A stretch of 59,035 nucleotides of DNA, filler included, from Sluysia triapertura (Eukaryota), in NCBI GenBank assembly GCA_046118255.1. It is 4 parts of 4 records of this genome, joined end to end, with 100 filler letters (N's around TTAATTAATTAA, not from the genome) between each part and the next. Parts side by side here need not be neighbours in the genome. Positions count along the whole stretch, not along the records: positions 12,547 to 31,503 come from JBJNIA010107537.1; 3 more parts are not named here. The stretch is one strand, 5' to 3'. Both the position numbers and the translations under genes were made by a program. Shown here piece after piece: positions 9,948 through 45,591 of this stretch (position 1 is the stretch's first letter; every line of letters begins with the position of its first letter). The notes beneath the pieces are model-generated. The model ran no database searches. It had not been told where the DNA came from and saw nothing but the letters and a program-made list of their open reading frames with translations.

Positions 9948-10092
9948 TGTTGGGATACAGGCCTAAGGTGCCATAGTGTAATTGAGTATAATAATCTAAA
10001 AATTGTTAGATGGGGCCGATAGCTCAGTGGTAGGGCATCGAACTGCGCAGCGAGAGGTCCCGAGTTCGTTCCCGGTCAGTCCATTTTATGAA
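9948..10092 (+). mobile_element. tRNA-containing LTR-like element, copy 1 (diverged, 3' end eroded)
   Basis: Starts TGTTGGGATACAGGCCTAAGGTGCCATA, shared with the copy at 24338-24435. A tRNA-like unit at 10012-10083 has an A box (TAGCTCAGTGG) and B box (GAGTTCGTTCC) and is followed by TTTTATGAA. Confidence 0.7.
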
Positions 10093-12546: not shown

Positions 12547-13409
12547 CGTTTCAAAAACTTAAACCTTCAACAAACTTTCATAAACCAAGCTAAACATCTA
12601 ACTTACTCTACATTCTCATCCCTTTTATCACTTTCATTTCTATCTCCATCTTATAGTATTACATATGTCAGAAGAAAGAAAAGAAAACAGCAAGATCATG
12701 TTTTTCAAAGAACCAAGACTTTTATGTGTTTAATTATATATATTCTCTTTATTATTATCACTTTTATTATTACTTCTATTATTATTATCCTTATTATTAT
12801 GCATTATTATTACTTTTCATCATTTTAATTATTATTATTATTAATTACTATTATTAGTCTTATTATCATCAATTACTTTATTATAATTATTACGCCATAT
12901 CTGTACTGTTATTTATTATTATGTAATAATTAAATGCACTACACTTCAACATCCATATGGAATTATTCACAACCCAATCAGAGTACACATTATCTACCAT
13001 CTTTCAATTACTCTGATTGGGCATACTAAAATTAGTGTTGATAATGAGATAAATTTGATTGGTTATGTGAAAAAAAGTAATTACATGCAAAAATAAAGAG
13101 TCATCAAAAAAAAGTAGACAAAAAATATACATACAAAGAGATTAAGAAAAGAAATTAAAAATACAAACCGAGAACAAAGACAGCAAATCAAAAAGAGGAG
13201 CAGCCATACTGAAACGAAATAAGAAAACAGAAAACACAAAAAATTATCTCACGTAAAGAAATAATCTACTTTGGTGAAAATACTACAATTTGAATACGAT
13301 TAACAATACTTGTTCATAACTAAAATCAGACGGCCATCTTTTGCAGTATTTAGTAAAAGATAGAGTAAAAAGTAATTTAATTAGTACACCAACTTCTACA
13401 TTGTTAACG

Positions 13410-15005
13410 ATGTCGAATACCGATCTAGTTAACAATCACTACGATAATTTAAAGAATGATTTGTCAAATCGTAATAAATCATCAACAATTTGCTTGCGAA
13501 ATTTAAGCAATTGGACCAAAAGTGTTCTGATAATCAATGAAATGGATAGTTTTAGACATGATACACGTTTTGTTAAAGTCTTAGATCTTGTTTCTGGCAA
13601 GGTTGGTGACATACTAAAATGGAATAAAGCAGGAGTTGGCCACGTTACATTTTTAGACATTGCAGAAGTTCCAGTTAAAGAGAGTCAAGCAAGATACGAA
13701 AATCGTAAATGTTTATTTTCCGCAGATCCTCACTGTATGGATTTTACAAATAACAATTTCAGCGAAATGTTTAATTGTGAATACGATATTTTAGGCTGCC
13801 AGTTTACATTTCACTATAGCTATGAATCTAATGATCAAGTTTATTCGACAATTAATAATATTTCGAAGGGTTTGAAGCCAAATGTTTTTTTCATAGATAA
13901 AAGACCAAAGTCAAATTCTGTTTATTCTGTTAAATTCAAAAGTATGAATCGTGTAAATAGTCCGAAATGTGATATGAACCATATATTTGGTATCGACATA
14001 AGCATGAACCATGTAAATAATTCGAATGGCGATATGAACCATTTATTTAGTATTGGCATAAGCACGAATCGTATAGATAGTATGAATGATAATGCGAGAC
14101 ATATATTTAGTGTTAGTGAAGGTATCATTTATGTCATTAGTCTGAACGATCATACCAATTGGGTATTTAGCGTCGGTGAAGGTATACATCATGTGAACAG
14201 TCTGAGTTGTGACACAAACCATCAACCTAGCGTTGGCAAAGGTACACAAAATCATAAAGGAGGTATATATTTTTTTAAATGTAATTCAAGTTCAAAAACG
14301 TTTAACTCTTTTCATAATGATATTATTATTTTTTGTAACTTCAGATATACCAACCTGTATCTTGGCAAAATTGGATCCAGTAACGAAGACGAACGATCCA
14401 GCTGCGCACGACTTAACAAATATATGAATCTTGTAAATATTAAAATTTTAATAAATGTTTATTTTAAACGTTTTAAATTCAATGTCTTTAACACTTGCTG
14501 TAAACGATATAAATTAACTAATTTTAACATTCGTCTTAAATGTTTGAAATATTCAGTAGTTAATATAAATGAAAATGTGAATAACCATGACAAAAGTAAG
14601 AATAACACTGAACGCAAAAACTCTATAAGTCTCAAGGACTCTGACCTCAGTCCCGCCAAAGCTCCCGTGAATTTCGAATATTACAACGGCATCAGGTATG
14701 ATCTCATCACCTGCAAAGCTAAATGTAATAGGTGTATTCTAAAAAATGAATTCTCACATCATAAATTGTTACTCAATAACCCGACCGGGTTTAATATATA
14801 TGTTGCCGAATTCAATAACCTTACAAAAGTCGATACTCTATTCGACCATAATCTTAAATTGCGTATTCCGCTAGATGTTTCACTCGACCACATCCATCTT
14901 TATCTGCAGATCATTACGCCCTCTAACTTTGTCATGGCTTTCATTCGTTATAAAACACCAAAGCATAAAAATAATAAAATTTTAAACTCCATACCAGTAT
15001 TATAA
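13410..15005 (+). CDS. Intronless chimeric ORF (531 aa from ATG 13410): degenerate mRNA cap guanine-N7 methyltransferase (RNMT/Abd1-like) domain, 20-aa repeats and an unknown C-terminal region
   Basis: VNNHYDNL, LRNLSNWTKSVLI, VLDLVSGKVGDILKW, FLDIAEVPVKESQARYE, CQFTFHYSYES, LKPNVFFI and NSVYSVKF are RNMT motifs in the correct order. The SAM-binding glycines are replaced and the RNMT C-terminal part is absent. Confidence 0.8.
   Translation: MSNTDLVNNHYDNLKNDLSNRNKSSTICLRNLSNWTKSVLIINEMDSFRHDTRFVKVLDLVSGKVGDILKWNKAGVGHVTFLDIAEVPVKESQARYENRKCLFSADPHCMDFTNNNFSEMFNCEYDILGCQFTFHYSYESNDQVYSTINNISKGLKPNVFFIDKRPKSNSVYSVKFKSMNRVNSPKCDMNHIFGIDISMNHVNNSNGDMNHLFSIGISTNRIDSMNDNARHIFSVSEGIIYVISLNDHTNWVFSVGEGIHHVNSLSCDTNHQPSVGKGTQNHKGGIYFFKCNSSSKTFNSFHNDIIIFCNFRYTNLYLGKIGSSNEDERSSCARLNKYMNLVNIKILINVYFKRFKFNVFNTCCKRYKLTNFNIRLKCLKYSVVNINENVNNHDKSKNNTERKNSISLKDSDLSPAKAPVNFEYYNGIRYDLITCKAKCNRCILKNEFSHHKLLLNNPTGFNIYVAEFNNLTKVDTLFDHNLKLRIPLDVSLDHIHLYLQIITPSNFVMAFIRYKTPKHKNNKILNSIPVL
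13944..14243 (+). repeat. Coding tandem repeat, 5 x 60 nt (20 aa)
   Basis: MNRVNSPKCDMNHIFGIDIS / MNHVNNSNGDMNHLFSIGIS / TNRIDSMNDNARHIFSVSEG / IIYVISLNDHTNWVFSVGEG / IHHVNSLSCDTNHQPSVGKG. Confidence 0.85.
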
Positions 15006-17422
15006 AGAATTCAAATATTTTAAGGTGTTAAATGCTCGTTAATAGTGCGTAAAATATTAAATGATCTCAAAGTTCATAAATACTTTATCAAAGATAATTT
15101 AATGCCTCCCGACTTTTCCTAAGCTTATCTCAAGCCTGCAAAAGATCTCAACACCTTATAAAGTGTTTTGGAATTCTTTATCTCCCAACATCATCATAGA
15201 TGCCTTCACACTCACCCTTTTAATCCAACAATATTTATAATGTTCTATCAATCCATTTTTATGAATTATTCATACAATTCCATATGGTTCCTTCCCATTT
15301 TCTGTTCCACAGTTGCGCAATCTCAACAATATAAAGTAAAAGGTTATATGAAATCTGTTGCATTTGGAAAAAGGAACATTATGTGATTTGTAACGAATAT
15401 TGTGACTAAACAGTTAAATCTTGTAATTAATGGTTAAATCTTTGTGGTTTGAAAAGAAGGAAAATAGGATTGTCTAATGTGTGATTAAAATTGCATCTTA
15501 TATGAATTGTAAAGCTAGTATATGATGATACCTAACTTTATGCATTATGAATTGAGCTAAGGTGACTCATTTACTTTGATTTTTCTAAACTGCACTCAAT
15601 GCAATATTTTGTAAAATCACATCTGCATTAACTTTTATGATTTCCTTCATATTTTAATCTTTTAATTATGAAAATCATTTACACTGTATATCATACTCAG
15701 ATCATACATCTAGAGGTTCGTTTTAGGATATGTTTCTAGCATATTCGAATAATCTACGGCGTGAGATTTTTTGTTATCACGTATATTTCATTAAAACAAT
15801 ATTTTATACTCAGATCTCGAATACTTATCAAATACTTTACAAAATTGACTAAGAGAATTTCTTGCAAGTACAGTTTTCATTGAAAGTAACACGCACGTTT
15901 CAATAGCGTAATTTGCATTTGAATTATTTTTGTCATGTGAGTTTAATATTCCATTAAATAATTCATTTCATTTCGAATTTGAGCAACTGCTGAGTAAATT
16001 TTAACTGACTTGACATAAATTCATGCTCCACTTTCATTCATACAATAACATTACAAAATAACGGTGACAAAACCAAAATATATACTTAAACCCTTCGCTC
16101 CCAACCACGAATATACTCATGATACGCAATATAGATTATAACGTACAACTTGTGGAGAGCTTACAAACATTTTATAGCCACAAACATAAACTTGACACGA
16201 TGGCTACAAATAAATTGTTTTTACAAAAATTCTACTTTATTTATTAATTTGTTATGTTTACACCTTCCCAACTCAGTTAGAGTCAAATTGTTCAATATTA
16301 CATAATCCCGTTCTCTAACACGAAATAGAATCCAAGTAATCTTTTTCAAATTTACAGAAAGTGTCCCGCTTTTCAGTATTTTCATACTCTTTAAAAATAC
16401 TATATTTGTGTAATTCATGATGTTTTTTGCTTAAACGTGTGTGCAAATAAGAAAAAGGATATCGAGTCTTCTTCCATTCATTCCCATTGTCAACCACACG
16501 AGCATACTCGTGTTCGATGATTATTTGACAAAATGTGTGGAATTTATATTGATATAATAAATCTTAGATAAACAACACTCAAAACAGAAATGGCAAAGTG
16601 AATAACTTCATACAATTTAAGACTGGCAACGAATGGATTAAAATAAACGATCAAATAAGCTTCAAATTTCGTTAGTTCGTACAGACACGAGCACAATAAT
16701 AGTGATGATGATTTCAATGATACAGAAATTACACAATGCATAAATATGTTTTAGTTCTAGCTCCTAGATTTAATTATAAAATGCATTGGCCTATCCTACA
16801 AAATTAGAACCAAATGTTTGTAAAATTCATGGAGCAAGTTAAATTTAATCAAACCTGTTTTAAAAAATATATTTATTATAAATCAAACAAGCACAATCAA
16901 GCAACAGCAAAATTCAGAAAATTTTTTACAAGTTTAAAAACAATTCACTTAATGACAAGACTATGGAAAATTTAAAAATACTCAAAGTTAGAAAATCAAT
17001 TGAAAAATCCAATTAAAGTTGCTGACGATTTGATTGTCGTTTAACTAGGAAAAGAAATAAATTGTTTAAATAGGACAAACTGTTTTTGATTTAGGTAAAT
17101 TAAAAATGTATCTATATACTGATTCTATATAATTTCTGAATTTTTCACGAAGAAGCTATAATATCTATCTCAATTAACAAACATAAGTACTATAAGTGAT
17201 GCACATACAGACAGACAGACAGACTCCAATATTACATTTTTATTTGACAATCAGAATTTAAAAATAAACGTGCATTATTATTTATTATTATTATTATTCA
17301 ATTTTGTACGTTTTGAAGGATTGCAAATAAACAAATAATTGCACACACAAATCAATTGAATAAAACTAAAAGAACGTCGGGTTGAAGTAGAAATCACAGA
17401 TTACGTAGATTATCTTCTTTCA

Positions 17423-20400
17423 TCAAGCATTTTCATCCGATAAGGAATGAAGAGTATCATCTTCATTCTGCAATTCCATTTCTCGAACTAAACTGCTCAA
17501 TCGAATTCCTTCGTCACTGTCGCCTTCTCTTTCTTGTACTGGTGATATATTAGTAGTAATCGCTTCACCATCAGCATTAACAACAGCTTCTTCAAGTTCT
17601 TCCGAAGACGCTAATAAAGCATCTCCTTGATGAAGTAATGAAACTGCTTGATTGTCTACTGTGATTATGTATTCTGGATTGGGTGGTTCTGGAAGAAATT
17701 CCACACCAGGAAGCATTTTATTGATTATTGCATTGGCCTAAAATATTTAAAAAAAATGTAATATAGACCACACAAAATATTTCGATCACTCTCGAACTTT
17801 AAATATCGTTTTGGAATTACAATGGATCAGAATGCCGGATAAAGGGGTGACTGCCTGGGGTGCCACTATAAAATATTTTTTTAGATTTTATAAATTAAAA
17901 TCGATCTTTTTCGTGAGACATCGATTTTTTATCAAGAAATAAATTTTTTCTTTAATACTAAATAAAGGTCACAAAGTTAATTATTTTAATATTGTGAACT
18001 GTTTACAAACTTATTTTCAAAAAAATTAATTTAATTAACTATAATATTGAATTTTTCACAAATAGCATTACAAAAAATCTTGTATGTCACACGTATGTAA
18101 CATAAATAGCATAAACCCTAGATCGGGCCCTGGATCCGAAAATGTTTAATGAAATAAATCTGGATATATTCTTAATTCGTTGACAGAACAAATAATTTGA
18201 CAATATGCTTATCTAATCACATTAAATAATCACATATCACACATCATCGAAACCATTTGTTCACAATTTTATTATTTTCCTTTATTTTAACTATAGAAAC
18301 CATTATACTAGAACACTTGCACACACACAAGGGAGATTATTTTCTTATATTTAATCCAACCTCATTAAAGCAAGTATCCAACTCCAGACCATCTAATTGG
18401 CTGCTCACTGATTGAATATAAAAACCGAGTTTCTCTTTTTTGTCTTCTGATTGCTGTTGTTGCTGTATTGATTCGTGTAAAGTGAAATTGAAATCAACAT
18501 CAATATCCGAATAATCAGGCAATGAAAAGAAACTCTGAAAAAGAATTGATGGCTTTATCGAACCGGGATTACCGATATCGTCTGAAAATATTATAAAATA
18601 TAACATAAAATATCATAGAATATCAATAGATGTAAATAGTTAATTTCAACCAAACTATTATTATTATTATTATTATTATTATTTAGTGTTTATTCCAAAA
18701 TAAGTGTTAATTACTACTAGCTCTATTCAAAATGATTGTCTCATTTGACATATGTTGCTAACTTAACAATATAATAAGATGATAATGAGTCATTTGTTTA
18801 TGAACAATAGAGAATTATAAAATAATTTTTGGTAAGTAATTATTCAATAATTATAATAATTTTATAAATAACTACCAATTTCTGGAATTTGTAATTTTTA
18901 GCTGTGTTCAAAAACAACTCGCTGCTGTTTTCTTTTCAGTCCAAATAACTTTAAATCATGGAATAAAGCACATAAATTTAAGTGTACGAGAGAAATGCCA
19001 TCCTGAAAACACTTCTGGTGCGATATAACAATAAAAAATTGCCAAAAGGATTATAAAAAATGAATGGAATTATTAACTTAATTTGTCAGCCTCCTAAAAG
19101 TCCACATTTTAATGTACTTGATTTAGGATATTTCAATACAATTCAGTCTATTCAATATCAAAAATATTGACGATCTTCTTGCCGTAGTTCAACGTACTCG
19201 GAGGATCATGCTGTCGAAAAAGTAGAAAATATTTTCTTGACTCTTCAAAAAGACTTCGAAAGTTCAATGTTAGCTGGAGGAGGCAATAATTATCTACTAG
19301 CACATCTTGGGAAAGAAGCATTGCGAAGAAATGAAGAATAAACTTCCAGAAATTGGGAAGCAATTGAAACTGCTGACAATGTCTGTGATATAATATAATT
19401 TGTAATAAAATATTTTCATGAATAAAGACGATCATTTTTGAAAGGGGATAGTATTACTTTTAAGTGACTGCATTATATAAATATTCCTTTTTCTTTTAAA
19501 ATTTCCGTGAATGACACCGAACTCTTATTTTGACGTGTGCATTCATAATACAAACTGCTTTAAATCCTATTCAAATCCGACAAAAAATGTTTCTGTCAGC
19601 AGCTGCATAATTGTACACGTATTTTGTGATTTTAAGAATTTATTTATTAAATTTATAAAAAATGCAATTTAAATAGATACTATTATTTATTATTGATAGA
19701 AAATAAGAAACTCGAGCATTCGCTCCCACAGAATTTCTGACGAAGTAATGATTCGTCAGATAAACTGGTCTCGTATTTTTCATAAACACTCAGTACATTG
19801 AATTAGAAAAGGTGATTATCGTACTTATTTCAAATCTACAAATTTTACAAATCTGAAAAGTAAAAAGTATAAAGTATATTTCTGTTTCACATTTAACTAT
19901 ATTTTCTTCATGGAAAATTCTAATTATATAAACATACCACGTTTCAAACTTTTTATTTAAGAGACTACACAGAATTAGTATTTTATTGATATTCCCGTTT
20001 TTTTCAATACCTTTAAACACCTTTTTGTCATCGAATCAATCAATGTATTTACTCTTTTTATTTCAATCTTTTCCAAAACATCCAACATTGATTTTTTAAC
20101 TGAGATATATTGTTATACTGTTTGTCTTGATAATTGAGACCATAAATTTTCTATTGGATTGAGGTCAGGAGATCTTGCTGGCCACTCTGACACTTTTCAT
20201 CCATCTTTACTGAACTTATTATGTGCAGTTTTAGATGAATGACAAGGAGCGCTATCCTGTTGAAAGATTGCATTGATAATTTCTGGAAGTTCGACTTACC
20301 GAACTACTACTTCTTTTATCAATCATAGTACTTATCACTATTACGAGTTGATGGAACCACACTTAAAGCTAGCTTTTTATCATAAATTATGGCAACTCGT

Positions 20401-23243
20401 AACCGTAACTGATCCCCCACCCCAAATTCGCTCAGAAAATATTTCTTTTGAATCCTTTAGATGCCAATTCTTTCACGTTCTACTTCATTCATTTTTCTTT
20501 TAAGAACAATTTTTTAAACCGTCAATAAAAATATACCTGTGTCAATAATATAGTCTTTGAAATAATATAATGTATTATGAAGATGATATTACGTCTTATT
20601 ATAGTTTTATCTCTACTTTTTTACATTTGTATCCTGCTACAAACGTTTTGCCGGTGTTTTTCTTATTTTAATTTGGTAAGCAAAATATCATAGTGGGTTT
20701 TTCTATAATGTACGCTTTATACCTAATAATAGGAGACGCACGTAGATAGAGCAATACTTTTTAAAATTAGTTTGAATGAGGGTCACTCTGAAAAACTATT
20801 TCTTTTAAAAACTGAAAAAACTAAGTTAATAATTTTAATTATTAGCACACTAAAACGGTTAAACAAAACTAGAAACAATATAATAATAATAATAATAACA
20901 CATACTGTATTATTTTAATTAGATTTTTTGATTTGTTTAAACTAACCTTATTACTAATAAACATACAAATTTATAAATAAAAAATCCCGGATAGGACGTA
21001 AAATTTTGATATATTGATTACTACACAGTATGTAACTCGAACTGAACCTGAAAGAATATGTTTCCAATTTAGTTACTGGTTGAAAAATTATCTTGACGTC
21101 TTGATTGTAGGTGTGCAATTTCTTACGTGTCTTATATAAAATTTACTCTTATTTATATACTGCTTTGTTAAGTGCTTAGTGTTTGCAAAAACATATAATG
21201 AATTTAATTTAATGCATTTCCTATTTGCTTAATTGAATTTTGTTTATTCTGTAATTTGTTTAAATTTATTTTAAACTTTAAATTTTTTAAATTTATTTTA
21301 AAATTATCTTAATTATTGTTTATTTTTAATTAATTTTACTTAAAGTTTAATTTTTATCATTGCATGAGATTGCTTTTACATAACCGCAAACTTAAATAAA
21401 AATTAGATGTCAAAAACAACAAATGTAATTTCTTCTTTTATGTCATTTTATGTTATATTTATTTTCTTCTGCGAATAGTAATCTTTGTAATGACTTTTGT
21501 TGTGTGATCTTATTGATTTTGTTTTGACGTCATTGCTTGTTTTTTGTTCAGCGTGCGCTTCTGGACCCTCATTCTGAAAAATGCAGCGAAGGACTTTAGA
21601 TTGAAACGAACATATCTTCGATATTAAGAATTACTATGCAAGGATTAGCTACAAGCATGTTGTAAAAAGATGGGAAGCAAACTCAGAAGACTTGCACTGA
21701 GTAAGTCGACAATGTTCAATCTTGTACCCAAATTTGAAGTAACTGGAAGTGTCAAATGCTCATAAAGAAGGTTATCCGAAAACAGTTCGTTCATCTGAAT
21801 ACAGGTATAGAGTGGCAGCTGTATTTGTTCATTCTCCTAAAAATCTATCCTCCACACATCGAAAGAGCTGAAAATTTCTCGAACCTCACTTTACCGTATA
21901 TGGTATGACATTGGTCTAAAACCATACTGATCTCGTCTTCTTCATGCCTTAAGTAAGGATAACCCGGATAATTTTTTACTATTTTGTGAATAATCACCAG
22001 ATTTTCCAGATTTCAGAGGAAACTTGCTAGAAAGTATGTTGCAGTGTTGTCAAAAGATGTTGAATATTTATAAATACTAAATATAGCTATTAAATTTGTC
22101 GTTTTTGTAATCTAATTTTTATTTAAGTTTGCGATTCGGTTACTTTTGGGACACCTTGCATATATAAAAGTTTGATGATATCAAGGATTGTATAAGAAAA
22201 TGATTTGTTAAATAAGATATGTATTTAACTATCATTCTGTAGATCCAAGTTCATATGCAGAGATGTACTTAAAACAATAGCCAACATTGAGCCTAATTTC
22301 ATTGTACCGACTGTGGCATTGTCACTAACAATCACTATTCTTTGTAAATTTAAATAAATATTGCTTCATTGAAACAAAAGCTGTTCTGATATTGCAAAAC
22401 ATTTGTCAAATAAATTGACTCATTTTATCGATTCAAAATACAATAATTAACCCTTTACGGACCTATTGTATTTCCATTGAATCCTCTGCAGGTCCTACTT
22501 AATTCCAGCGAAAACACAAAATTTTCACAATTAAACGCCTGATTCAAAAAAATATACGTTTATGTTATATTTATGAATATAGCGTCGGGATCACCTCAAA
22601 GGGTTAAGGTCGCACGCTTTTCGAAAGAGTATACATTAAAATGGTATTGTTTAATAAAATAATACTTACATTTCTGAAATAATTGTTCAATGTACGATGA
22701 ATACAGTTCTCGAGGTGAATCGCGCTCGTCGAGTGAAGTAGCGATAAAGTGAACTATATCTAAATGAACAACAAACATTAATTTCATAAAACATATGGTG
22801 TGTCTGGGTTAGTCGAATTATATCATTTAGCCAATAAAAACCAATACTCGATTTCTTATCCAATAAAATTTCAGAGTCAATGTGTGCAATAAAAAATGAT
22901 AAAAGTTAACAAAATAAGAGAAGGTGTGCGAAGTTAAAGAAAAACACAATCAATTATCAAGTATTGAATATTATTCATAAATAATAATTGAATTACGAAT
23001 TGCAAGCAGATCTTAGCAATATTAAGAACGAATGAATTTGTTCAGCATTGTAAATAAATTGATAGATAATATTATTACTTTCTAGAAAAAGCACTATTTT
23101 TTAATCCATTGTTACATGAAATAACAAAATCTAAAAAATGACTCACATAATTCGGAATTGTCATTGTGCCTCTTTTCAACAGGCAGTTCCAACAGTATGA
23201 TGGGTTGTGTGGTATTATCTCGATACAATGGCAAAAGCAATAT
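17423..23243 (-). CDS. CHM: Rab escort protein (Rab geranylgeranyltransferase component A, REP/CHM homologue), four 3' exons: 23243-23147, 22759-22670, 18581-18361, 17737-17423
   Basis: Phase-compatible GT-AG splicing gives ILLLPLYRDNTTQPIILLELPVEKRHNDNSELY-IVHFIATSLDERDSPRELYSSYIEQLFQKY-DIGNPGSIKPSILFQSFFSLPDYSDI...LELDTCFNE-ANAIINKMLPGVEFLPEPPNPEYII plus an acidic tail. This is collinear with the REP1 C-terminus (VRVIEL, YLVHL, KPRILW, F.PPPPNPEDII). Confidence 0.85.
17828..18132. mobile_element. hAT (Tip100-like) non-autonomous element in a REP intron
   Basis: Imperfect TIRs: left CAGAATGCCGGATAAAGGGG; reverse complement of the right end CAGGGCCCGATCTAGGG. No clean TSD. Confidence 0.45.
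18717..19451 (+). mobile_element. Internally deleted DD39D (plant-mariner/Stowaway-type) Tc1/mariner element
   Basis: NLICQPPKSPHFNVLDLGYFNTIQSIQYQK...IDDLLAVV...ENIFLTLQ...GGGNNYLLAHLGK. The TIRs are TA-flanked: left CTAGCTCTATTCAAAATGATTGTC, right (reverse complement) CTATCCCCTTTCAAAAATGATCGTC. Confidence 0.85.
19975..20500 (-). mobile_element. Tc1 (DD34E-type) transposase C-terminal relic
   Basis: AIFQQDSAPCHSSK...EWPARSPDLNPIENLWSQL...LIDSMTKRCLKVLKKTGISIKY*, with stops and frameshifts. Confidence 0.9.
21380..22158 (+). mobile_element. Internally deleted Tc1/mariner element, DD41D(rosa)-like
   Basis: The inverted repeat CGCAAACTTAAATAAAAATTAGAT lies near both ends, and the right terminus reads CAAGGTGTCCCAAAAG on the reverse strand. 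The interior encodes an HTH N-terminus: SKSTMFNLVPKFEVTGSV...PKTVRSSE...SPK...ELKISRTSLYRI...GLKPY. Confidence 0.8.
22165..22435 (+). pseudogene. Possible decayed C2H2 zinc-finger array
   Basis: Frameshifted pieces KFICRD, FHCTDCGIVTNNHYSL and CKTF. Confidence 0.3.
22451..22603. mobile_element. piggyBac-derived MITE (153 bp)
   Basis: TTAA-CCCTTT...AAAGGG-TTAA termini. Confidence 0.75.
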
Positions 23244-24337
23244 CTAAATAAAATTAGAAATTATTTTTTAAAATAATAGTTCATGTGCGATTTGTCTATG
23301 GTTTTATTATCATTCTCGAATAATATTAATAAGAAATAATGGCCTCTTTTGAACCACAATACCCAGGTAACGTTTTATTGTTTTTGATAGTAATATAATA
23401 TAATATAATATAATCAATAAGAAATTAAAAGTAAAATGTCAGATAAATAAACATAATTCTCCTCCGTCTCGTCCTCATCTGGCTCCGCAAAATGATGACA
23501 CTATCAAACACTCTCACAACATCAACGATTTACTTTCAATTACTCATTTTTTACATATTCACATCCACACACACCACATATTTCAATGATCTCTACATGA
23601 ACATCAAATATTCTTCATTACATTATAATTTACCATTGTTATTATAATGTAATGTTACGAGTCAATTTACCCTTCTAATACTTCTCAATTACTTAAAGTA
23701 ATTGACCTACAATCATAAATGAACAGAATATCAAATTAGTGCGTTCATCTGCGACCCAAGACTTACAAACTGAATGGCTTGTTCAGAGAATTTTGATGAA
23801 AGAATTATATTAAAGATTGTGGAAATCAAGTTATATATCTATGCCATTTGAGTATATTTAGTCGTACTAATTGGGTCTGTAACTCCTTAACACCGAGGAT
23901 CAACATGGATGCTAATAAAAATACCAACTAACTAATAAGGTGGATGCAAGGGACTCGTAATTACACTTATAAAGTTTTAAGTATTGTCAGTGAACAAAAG
24001 TTCGATTAATAAACGAACATTGATACGTTAAATATATACAATACTTTTTCCCGAATAATCGTAGCAAGCTTTATTTTAATACCCAGAACAATGGATATCC
24101 AGTGAACCTCAACCCAATCGATCTGATGGAAAAGGAAACCGATGTTAGATAGAGAATTAACTTCAGCAATAATGTTTATAACGAAGATCGAATCCTTGTA
24201 AAGGTGTTTTAGAGGTACTTGAAGAATCTACCAAGTTGAATCGATCAAGCCAAGCAAAATTATAGTAAAGTGTTATGTATTACTATATTACTATACTACT
24301 AAATAGTTTTGTCGATGTTATATATGGGACATCCATC

Positions 24338-24448
24338 TGTCAGACTTCATAAAATTGACTGACTGGAATAGAACCCAGCCACATTTAGCAATTTTATTTT
24401 ATTATTATATGGCATTTTAGGCCTGTACCACAACACCTCCCCACTTTT
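24338..24448 (-). mobile_element. tRNA-containing LTR-like element preceded by a polypurine tract (5' half of the tRNA deleted)
   Basis: Minus strand: AAAAGTGGGGAGG | TGTTGTGGTACAGGCCTAAAATGCCATA...TTGCTAAATGTGGCTGGGTTCTATTCCAGTCAGTCAATTTTATGAAGTCTGACA. Confidence 0.7.
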
Positions 24449-24586
24449 AATGTATATTTTGGTTTAGACAAAAAAATAAATCTTTTATTTTATATTGTTA
24501 GAGCGGGAAAATCAATGTCGAAATCGATAGTTTAATACTAATGATAATACAATATAACAATTATTCTAAATAATTATTTTAGTAAT

Positions 24587-24639
<53 letters not shown>

Positions 24640-45490: not shown

Positions 45491-45591
45491 AAAGTTAGAC
45501 GGGGCTGATAGCTCAGTGGTAGAGCAGTCCGACTGCGCAGACGATGGTCCCGGGTTCGATCCCCGGTTAGTCCATTTTAGGAAGTCTAACA
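45491..45591 (+). mobile_element. tRNA-containing LTR-like element with a complete tRNA-like unit (45502-45574); probably not a functional tRNA
   Basis: The acceptor stem (GGGCTGA/TTAGTCC), D arm (GCTC-AGTGGTA-GAGC) and T arm (CCGGG-TTCGATC-CCCGG) fold. The anticodon arm does not pair canonically. It is followed by TTTT and AGGAAGTCTAACA. Confidence 0.8.

What the first reader, a model, noticed from the sequence alone, without database searches (positions are those of the whole stretch)
24338..24448. LTR family with a tRNA-derived Pol III cassette built into the LTR (four copies)
Seen in sequence: four related copies at 9948-10092 (+), 24338-24435 (-), 31426-31503 (-) and 45491-45591 (+). They look like tRNA-SINEs, but the homology extends 5' of the tRNA to a shared start TGTTG(G/T)G(A/G)TACAGGCCTAA..TGCCATA. 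It also stops sharply at a shared end, GAAGTCT(A/G)ACA, in three copies. The unit therefore has TG...CA termini and no poly(A) or simple-repeat tail. The 24.4-kb copy is immediately preceded by a polypurine tract (AAAAGTGGGGAGG), as a 3' LTR would be. Two copies differ by one base over about 78 nt and both sit at contig breaks, which suggests a young, high-copy family. Established: small-RNA genes inside LTRs are known from Cassandra (5S rRNA) and, as I recall, Helenus/Ajax-type non-autonomous elements. Inference: this is a short LTR retroelement driven by, or carrying, an internal Pol III promoter, possibly new for this lineage.
Basis: partly seen in the sequence, partly recalled or inferred. 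Interest (0 to 1): 0.85.

Follow-up and report, generated by a model that had tools for sequence, protein, structure and literature searches.

The report
Miniature LTR retroelement carrying tRNA-like promoter
The repeat is the long terminal repeat of a very small, gene-less LTR retrotransposon (about 400 bp) whose repeats each carry a tRNA-like unit; this type was described in 2024 as "Helenus", so this is a new, abundant family of a known kind.

Summary
Both copies in my piece exist: 24338-24435(-) and 31427-31503(-). A shared 27-nt motif matches twice against 0 in shuffles.

Genome-wide, copies start sharply at TGTTG and end at ..GAAGTCTAACA. The unit is a ~156-bp LTR made of three parts:
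- a 66-nt leader;
- a tRNA-like cloverleaf with A and B boxes 43 nt apart;
- a run of exactly four T, then 13 nt ending in CA.

Eight complete elements were found. Each is LTR, then TT+TGGTGAGCCCAC (primer-binding site), a 47-93-nt non-coding core, TTGGGTGAGATA (short polypurine tract), then LTR. Exact 4-bp target duplications flank 6 of 8 complete elements and 9 of 17 solo LTRs, against 0-2 in shifted controls.

An ordinary tRNA-SINE and a MITE are therefore excluded.

It is not a new kind. It fits Helenus/TRIMp3 (Kojima 2024) feature by feature, but matches none of that paper's published sequences.

The focal 24.4-kb copy is an old LTR that has lost the A-box half. A near-identical subfamily (31.4-kb copy) points to recent activity. 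Pol III transcription is inferred, not shown. The host organism and the primer tRNA remain unidentified.

The parts
24338..24435 (-). Old LTR copy, 98 nt instead of about 156. It keeps the leader, a B-box remnant (GGTTCTATTCC, 24365-24375), the T4 run (24351-24354) and the TG..CA ends. It has lost the A box, D arm and anticodon arm.
   Evidence: matches 50 of 51 natural LTR queries, best E 1e-10
24436..24448 (-). Purine-rich tract AAAAGTGGGGAGG abutting the LTR start. It resembles the family's tract TTGGGTGAGATA.
   Evidence: nhmmer alignments with 6 of 8 natural complete elements run 3-12 nt from the 3' LTR back into this tract. Such a G-rich run is very unlikely in DNA of 28% GC (my estimate).
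24315..24337 (-). Diverged primer-binding-site region, GA+TGGATGTCCCATATAT.. It matches 11 of 16 positions of the family's TT+TGGTGAGCCCACATAT.
   Evidence: In all 8 nhmmer comparisons, the alignment of the LTR's 3' half continues about 15-23 nt into the query's internal region.
31427..31503 (-). 3' half of an LTR of the young subfamily, cut by the contig end. It has part of the A box (AGTGGTAGAGC), the B box GGTTCGATCCC (31455-31465), the T4 run (31440-31443) and the end ..GAAGTCTAACA. No primer-binding site follows, so it is a solo or 3' LTR.

Best explanation
**What it is.** The repeat is the LTR of a terminal-repeat retrotransposon in miniature (TRIM) of the Helenus/TRIMp3 type.

**Structure of a complete element (about 340-410 bp).**
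- LTR, median 156 bp.
- TT spacer plus TGGTGAGCCCAC.. (primer-binding site).
- Non-coding core of 47-93 nt.
- ..TTGGGTGAGATA (short polypurine tract).
- Second LTR.
- 4-bp target duplications on both sides.

**Structure of each LTR.**
- TGTTGGGG plus an A-rich leader of about 66 nt, with a TATAATAAAA-like motif about 20 nt before the tRNA-like part.
- A tRNA-like cloverleaf of about 73 nt. The A box is TAGCTCAGTGG and the B box is GGTTCGATCCC, 43 nt apart. The anticodon loop is aberrant.
- Exactly TTTT, then 13 nt ending in CA.

**Shown here.** The anatomy, the duplications, the high abundance, solo LTRs alongside complete elements, and a near-identical subfamily.

**Inferred mechanism.**
- An autonomous LTR retrotransposon copies the element in trans. 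Kojima's rule for 4-bp animal families points to a Gypsy-type partner.
- The tRNA-like module supplies an internal Pol III promoter.
- Transcription would start near LTR position 67. It would have to read through the weak T4 signal of the 5' LTR and stop at the T4 of the 3' LTR.
- On that model the leader is U3, the tRNA-like part is R, and the last 13 nt are U5.

**The two window copies.**
- The 24.4-kb copy is an old LTR with an internal deletion. It has internal-type sequence on both sides, most simply explained as a remnant of a tandem LTR-core-LTR-core array.
- The 31.4-kb copy belongs to the young subfamily.
For: **Boundaries.** They are sharp genome-wide.

**Complete elements.** Eight were found, with 6 of 8 showing exact 4-bp duplications: ATTT, AAAT, GTAT, AATA, AATG, CAAG.

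**The 51 distinct full LTRs.**
- 23 are followed by TT+TGGTGAGCCCAC.
- 11 are preceded by TTGGGTGAGATA.
- 17 are solo, and 9 of these have exact 4-bp duplications. Shifted registers give 0-2.
- Every primer-binding-site motif in the sampled loci lies next to this LTR.

**tRNA-like unit.**
- ARAGORN draws a cloverleaf at LTR positions about 66-142 in 13 of 51 copies, mostly with 2- or 4-nt 'anticodons'.
- The A box is intact in 25 of 51 copies, the B box in 29, and both in 19. The spacing is 43 nt in 14 of those 19.
- The T run is exactly four in 48 of 51 copies.

**Abundance.**
- First-look candidates: 3876 for the full element, 772 for the core, 1101 for the young LTR.
- 16,015 contig pieces of run X1 lie on one element.
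- A second, differently labelled organism (run X2) holds the LTR plus the whole core, with 9 differing letters and 2 gaps over 135 nt.

**Match to the definition.** The structure agrees with Helenus, including the 4-bp duplication of animal families.
Against: - There are no transcription data, so use of Pol III is unproven.
- A TATA-like motif at about -20 would fit a Pol II start at the same place.
- The conserved T4 directly after the tRNA-like part should stop much of any Pol III transcription before the primer-binding site. A full-length template would then need read-through.
- T4 runs are scarce on the sense strand (2 against 8.6 +/- 2.4 in shuffles; leader 1 T4 against 125 A4). The copies share ancestry, so this mostly reflects one ancestral sequence and is weak evidence.
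- A and B boxes are no better conserved than the rest of the LTR.
- No tRNA gene with a 3' end complementary to at least 12 nt of the primer-binding site was found.
- No autonomous partner was found.
- The purine tract is short and interrupted.
Confidence: 0.9

Rival explanations
1. An ordinary tRNA-derived SINE (SINE2), mobilised by a LINE. On this reading the sequence upstream of the tRNA part is just shared flank.
For: The copies contain a tRNA-like head with A and B boxes, are short, and are very abundant.
Against: - Homology starts 66 nt before the tRNA-like part, at a fixed TGTTG, in all 51 copies.
- There is no A-rich or simple-repeat tail. Copies end at ..CTAACA.
- Duplications are a fixed 4 bp.
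- Copies occur as direct pairs around a primer-binding-site and purine-tract core.
Confidence: 0.02
2. A canonical Pol II-transcribed TRIM. The tRNA-like segment would be a passenger, for example an old SINE or tRNA insertion in the LTR, with no promoter role.
For: - A TATAATAAAA-like motif lies about 20 nt upstream of the tRNA-like start in 24 of 51 copies.
- A and B boxes are not more conserved than the rest of the LTR.
- The T4 run right after the tRNA-like part would end Pol III transcripts before the primer-binding site.
- Kojima also states that promoter function of Helenus is unvalidated.
Against: - The young, near-identical subfamily keeps perfect A and B boxes at canonical spacing, and an exact T4.
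- The whole element is within Pol III transcript length.
- The sense strand between the two T4 runs almost lacks T4, while A4 runs are common (weak).
- Upstream TATA-like motifs also serve Pol III at tRNA genes in several eukaryotes (general knowledge).
Confidence: 0.3
3. A DNA-transposon derivative (MITE) with short terminal inverted repeats TGTTRG..CYAACA and a 4-bp target duplication.
For: - The ends are an imperfect inverted repeat (TGTTGG against TGTTAG, 5 of 6).
- An 8-nt perfect inverted repeat, TGTTAGAC..GTCTAACA, brackets the tRNA-like part.
- The duplication has a fixed length.
Against: - TG..CA ends with short inverted repeats are the rule for LTRs.
- 34 of 51 copies sit next to the same primer-binding-site or purine-tract core, in direct pairs.
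- Solo copies alongside complete elements are what LTR-LTR recombination produces.
Confidence: 0.02

Closest known systems
Helenus (TRIMp3), Kojima 2024, Biology 13:119, PMC10886601
   Same: - Short non-autonomous element with two LTRs.
- tRNA-like sequence with A and B boxes inside each LTR, not a functional tRNA.
- Primer-binding site starting TGG, two nt after the 5' LTR, and a purine tract before the 3' LTR.
- 4-bp duplication, as in all animal families.
- LTR 156 and core 93 lie within the published ranges (bivalve families: LTR 104-193, core 87-268).
- Solo LTRs are common.
- Abundance is of the order reported for LTR-11_DR.
   Different: - None of its diagnostic motifs (leader, primer-binding site, LTR end) occurs in the paper's sequence file, apart from isolated short-word hits in unrelated families.
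- The primer-binding site fits none of the primer tRNAs the paper lists, as far as I can judge, and no matching tRNA gene was found.
- The host is an unidentified genome of about 28% GC.
- The D and T arms resemble those of bivalve Helenus-4_CVi. These arms are generic to many tRNAs, so shared descent does not follow.
Cassandra (plant TRIM with 5S rRNA in the LTR; Kalendar et al. 2008, as cited in PMC10886601)
   Same: A TRIM whose LTRs carry a small-RNA gene unit with an internal Pol III promoter and its own T-run terminator. It also forms tandem arrays.
   Different: The small RNA here is tRNA-like, not 5S; Rfam finds no 5S in the window. The duplication is 4 bp. The host is probably an animal (weak hint from an Mlf1IP-like exon).
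tRNA-derived SINEs (SINE2)
   Same: A tRNA-like head with A and B boxes, short length and very high copy number. A SINE2 is the likely source of the module, by insertion into an ancestral LTR (Kojima's proposal).
   Different: There is a fixed 66-nt sequence 5' of the tRNA part, no tail, a 4-bp duplication, and paired copies with a primer-binding site and purine tract.

Membership tests
Helenus / TRIMp3 | Short non-autonomous element with two LTRs in direct orientation and no coding capacity | tested here: met
   Eight complete elements: LTRs 135-159 bp, core 47-93 nt, total about 334-409 bp. Many more hits span the whole 350-nt query.
Helenus / TRIMp3 | tRNA-like sequence with conserved box A and box B inside the LTR | tested here: met
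   ARAGORN cloverleaf at LTR positions about 66-142 in 13 of 51 copies. A box in 25 of 51, B box in 29 of 51, typical spacing 43 nt. The focal 24.4-kb copy has lost box A.
Helenus / TRIMp3 | Primer-binding site just downstream of the 5' LTR | tested here: met
   TT+TGGTGAGCCCAC (3 mismatches or fewer) follows 23 of 51 LTRs. All 38 distinct motif sites in the loci adjoin this LTR.
Helenus / TRIMp3 | Primer-binding site complementary to an identifiable tRNA | tested here: inconclusive
   The pattern for a tRNA 3' end ..TGGGCTCR after a T loop gave 0 hits in the fragmented assembly. Beyond about 12 nt the site does not fit canonical T-arm geometry (my reading).
Helenus / TRIMp3 | Polypurine tract just upstream of the 3' LTR | tested here: met
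   TTG(G/A/T)GTGA(G/A/T)ATA precedes 11 of 51 LTRs, always abutting TGTTG. It is short and interrupted.
Helenus / TRIMp3 | 4-bp target duplication (animal families) | tested here: met
   6 of 8 complete elements. 9 of 17 solo LTRs are exact, against 0-2 in 15 shifted registers, and six of the rest match at 3 of 4 positions.
Helenus / TRIMp3 | Sequence identity to a published Helenus family | tested here: not met
   Motif searches of the paper's DataS1.fa found none of the leader, primer-binding-site or trailer motifs in one family. Helenus is defined by structure and thought to have arisen several times, so this makes the family new rather than a non-member.
Helenus / TRIMp3 | Transcription by RNA polymerase III from the LTR | not testable with these tools
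   No RNA run is on record for this organism. This is also unvalidated for published Helenus.
tRNA-SINE (SINE2) | Element starts at the tRNA 5' end, has an A-rich or simple-repeat tail, and has LINE-type duplications of variable length | tested here: not met
   A 66-nt fixed leader, the end ..CTAACA without a tail, and a fixed 4-bp duplication.
Cassandra / Ajax | 5S rRNA-derived sequence in the LTR | tested here: not met
   Rfam scan of the piece at E up to 1 gave no hit. The module is tRNA-like.

The most novel reading that the evidence does not exclude
This could be a Helenus lineage in an animal group where none has been reported. It is still active: the subfamily is near-identical and breaks the assembly at contig ends. 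Its LTR geometry is unusually clean: a TATA-like motif at about -20, the tRNA-like module acting as R, exactly four T, and a 13-nt U5. That would make it a natural system for testing whether an LTR retroelement can be replicated from a Pol III transcript that must read through its own terminator in the 5' LTR. Thousands of solo LTRs might also each release a tRNA-like small RNA.
Probability: 0.3. Interest if true: 0.55.

Novelty: new member of a known kind. Interest (0 to 1): 0.4.

Why it matters
- **Annotation.** Thousands of tRNA-like units would otherwise be called tRNA pseudogenes or SINEs. They also fragment this short-read assembly, because contigs end inside young copies.
- **Range of the type.** It adds an abundant, apparently recently active family to the small set of LTR retroelements that carry a Pol III-type promoter. 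Only Cassandra has been validated experimentally.
- **A testable question.** The fixed position of a minimal T4 signal 13 nt before the LTR end suggests a direct test: does Pol III make the replication template by terminator read-through, or does the tRNA-like unit only make a short RNA?

Tried and rejected
- **Rfam and ARAGORN on the window.** Neither found anything. The window copies are too decayed or truncated.
- **A partner LTR for the 24.4-kb copy.**
  - A pairwise alignment suggested a degenerate 3' LTR at about 24143-24300 (z 3.4 against shuffles).
  - blastn with 51 natural LTRs did not find it.
  - Its score is not above the real-sequence background of the piece (99th percentile 36.4). 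I rejected it.
  - Upstream similarity to the core (z 1.4) and to an LTR (z -0.5) is not significant either.
- **A blastn hit at 17273-17333.** E was 8e-6, but it is AT-rich microsatellite noise.
- **Column conservation along the LTR.** It is nearly flat, 0.82-0.97, and biased by how the copies were found. It gives no support for selection on the boxes.
- **T4 avoidance on the sense strand.** The effect is real in counts but not independent across copies, so I treat it as compatible only.
- **Primer tRNA.** The pattern search gave no hit.
- **Autonomous partner.** No primer-binding site lies outside the TRIM in the sampled loci.
- **Organism identity.**
  - Run names are coded.
  - The best protein relatives of the cap-methyltransferase ORF are only 43% identical and unnamed.
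Full-length young copies and more complete elements could not be fetched, and I did not try another tool for them.

Full report
**1. Observation**

My piece is window 12547-31503. It equals contig C107537 of a 619-Mb assembly in 263,945 contigs, with about 20-33% GC per kb.

The minus strand of 24338-24435 starts TGTTGTGGTACAGGCCTAAAATGCCATA and ends TTTTATGAAGTCTGACA. The minus strand of 31427-31503 runs from the contig edge through a tRNA-like D and T arm to TTTTAGGAAGTCTAACA. A 27-nt motif spanning their shared 3' part matches just these two places. It matches none in 100 shuffles.

Neither ARAGORN nor Rfam calls anything in the piece.

**2. The family in the genome**

- **Focal copy plus flanks as query.** It gave 33 other hits. 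They begin at query position 25-26 (the TGTTG) or end at 123-126 (the ..ACA).
- **Full copies.** They measure 126-168 bp, median 156.
- **A complete natural element as query.** It gave 3876 first-look candidates. Its 91-nt core region gave 772, and the young 31.4-kb LTR piece gave 1101.
- **Contigs of run X1.** This is probably the source sample. 16,015 contig pieces lie on one element, and 2030 of them are at least 99% alike. Summed depth rises by four to five orders of magnitude over the single-copy flanks. The tool warns that this is not a copy number.
- **A second organism.** A differently labelled organism (run X2) holds the LTR end, the entire core and the next LTR start on one contig, with 9 differing letters and 2 gaps over 135 nt.

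**3. Anatomy**

Eight distinct complete elements were recovered. Each reads: LTR (135-159 bp), TT, TGGTGAGCCCACATATCGAATAC.., a core of 47-93 nt in all..GAATTGGGTGAGATA, then LTR. Six of the eight have an exact 4-bp duplication: ATTT, AAAT, GTAT, AATA, AATG and CAAG. The two LTRs of one element are 74-91% alike, so these sampled elements are old.

The 51 distinct full-length LTRs sort as follows.

| Context | Number of LTRs |
|---|---|
| Followed by the primer-binding-site motif | 23 |
| Preceded by the purine tract | 11 |
| Neither (solo) | 17 |

- Nine of the 17 solo LTRs have an exact 4-bp duplication. The 15 shifted registers give 0-2.
- Six more solo LTRs match at 3 of 4 positions.
- No copy has an A tail.
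- Every primer-binding-site motif in the sampled DNA adjoins this LTR.

**4. The tRNA-like unit**

- ARAGORN draws a cloverleaf at LTR positions about 66-142 in 13 of 51 copies. Nearly all have 2- or 4-nt 'anticodons'. One is called Ala(cgc) and one Arg(gcg). Like published Helenus, the unit is unlikely to encode a working tRNA.
- Box A (TRGCNNA..GG) is intact in 25 copies, box B (GGTTCRANNCC) in 29, and both in 19. The spacing is 43 nt in 14 of those 19.
- The acceptor pairing I read includes a G3:U70 wobble. The D and T arms resemble tRNA-Ala as I remember it. This is a lead, not a test.
- Directly after the acceptor 3' strand comes a run of exactly four T in 48 of 51 copies, never longer. 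It is followed by 13 nt (A(T/C)GAAGTCTAACA) to the LTR end.
- An 8-nt perfect inverted repeat, TGTTAGAC..GTCTAACA, brackets the tRNA-like part.

**5. Mechanism**

*Shown.* This is an LTR-type integration product. It has TG..CA ends and a fixed 4-bp duplication. It has a primer-binding site and purine tract in the canonical places. It forms solo LTRs by recombination.

*Inferred.*
- The core is 47-93 nt and codes for nothing, so replication must depend on an autonomous element. Kojima links 4-bp animal Helenus to Gypsy. I found no partner.
- If the A and B boxes work, Pol III would start near position 67. The leader would then be U3, the tRNA-like part R, and the last 13 nt U5.
- The T4 in the 5' LTR would have to be read through for the RNA to reach the primer-binding site. 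The same T4 in the 3' LTR would end the template, at about 330 nt.

*In favour.* The T run is minimal in length. T4 is also almost absent from the sense strand between the two signals: 2 runs against 8.6 +/- 2.4 in shuffles. In the leader of the 51 LTRs there is 1 T4 run against 125 A4 runs.

*Caveats.*
- The copies descend from a few masters, so this asymmetry is at most a few independent observations. I count it only as compatible.
- The TATA-like motif about 20 nt upstream (24 of 51 copies) fits a Pol II start as well as a Pol III upstream element.
- Box conservation does not exceed that of the rest of the LTR.
- No RNA data are available.

**6. The two window copies**

*The 24.4-kb copy.* Alignment with natural copies shows it lacks about 45 columns, covering the A box, D arm and anticodon arm. 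It is a dead LTR.

- With all eight natural complete elements, the nhmmer alignment of its 3' half continues about 15-23 nt into the primer-binding site (window 24315-24337).
- With six of the eight, the alignment of its 5' half runs 3-12 nt back into the purine tract.
- Internal-type sequence therefore lies on both sides. None of the 51 sampled LTRs shows this arrangement.
- The simplest explanation is a remnant of a tandem LTR-core-LTR-core array. Such arrays are reported for LTR-11_DR.
- I could not find the outer LTRs.
- A solo LTR with a decayed duplication (GAGG/GATG) is the alternative.

*The 31.4-kb copy.* It belongs to a subfamily with many copies at 96-100% identity, often truncated at contig ends. 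One such copy in locus L022 shows that the subfamily has the same 66-nt leader. No primer-binding site follows the window copy.

**7. Comparison with the known**

Kojima 2024 (PMC10886601) defines Helenus by exactly these features. He lists families in six animal phyla, in fungi and in one plant. Animal families make 4-bp duplications. Bivalve families have LTRs of 104-193 bp and cores of 87-268 bp.

Searches of the paper's sequence file with twelve motifs from the leader, primer-binding site, purine tract and trailer found no family that shares them. This is a new family, not a listed one. No later paper in the library extends TRIMp3.

The host could not be named. An Mlf1IP-like exon hints weakly at an animal.

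**8. Verdict**

The kind has been known since 2024, so this is a new member of a known kind. It is abundant and probably recently active. Its polymerase, primer and helper element remain untested.

I built no family consensus. The alignment tool printed one by itself, and I neither use nor repeat it.

Noticed in passing
window 13341-15005 (+): A 554-aa open frame without stops in DNA of about 28% GC. Residues 24-221 match the mRNA cap guanine-N7 methyltransferase domain (Pfam E 1e-37). The best database relatives are only 43% identical. The usual glycine-rich SAM motif reads VLDLVSGKVGD. The C-terminal 300 residues are a degenerate repeat rich in N, S, H and I. This may be a divergent paralogue, a retrogene, or an exon read on into an intron.
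   Followed up: partly
window 26371-26685 (+): A 104-aa frame with a sub-threshold match to Pfam Mlf1IP (E 1e-6, 29 bits against a cutoff of 34.5). This is a weak hint that the host is an animal.
   Followed up: partly
LTR positions 59-66 and 149-156, e.g. L030:1445-1452 and L030:1535-1542: A perfect 8-nt inverted repeat, TGTTAGAC..GTCTAACA, brackets the tRNA-like module inside the LTR. The first arm repeats the TGTTRG of the LTR start. This could be a trace of an older, shorter LTR of about 98 bp, or of how the module was acquired.
   Followed up: no
L027:1515-1623 and L003:140-258: Two LTR copies at different loci carry the same AT-rich insertion of about 110-120 nt in place of the A-box half of the tRNA-like part. 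This looks like a subfamily with a second small element nested in the LTR.
   Followed up: no
L022:1-288 (-) and L017:1501-1770: Nested insertions. In L022 a young LTR copy follows directly on a slightly truncated older one. In L017 one copy sits in inverted orientation inside the leader of another. The family therefore often lands in or next to its own copies, or in AT-rich targets. Several duplications and flanks read ATAT or AATA.
   Followed up: no
run X2 (organism B) laid on L033:738-872: A second, differently labelled organism carries the same LTR end, the whole core and the next LTR start (9 differing letters and 2 gaps over 135 nt) at high k-mer depth. The family is shared by at least two taxa.
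   Followed up: partly
window 24585-24640: An (AAT)n microsatellite of about 55 nt lies 150 nt from the LTR copy. Similar AAT/ATT runs occur inside the leaders of some LTR copies (L017) and caused spurious blast hits.
   Followed up: no
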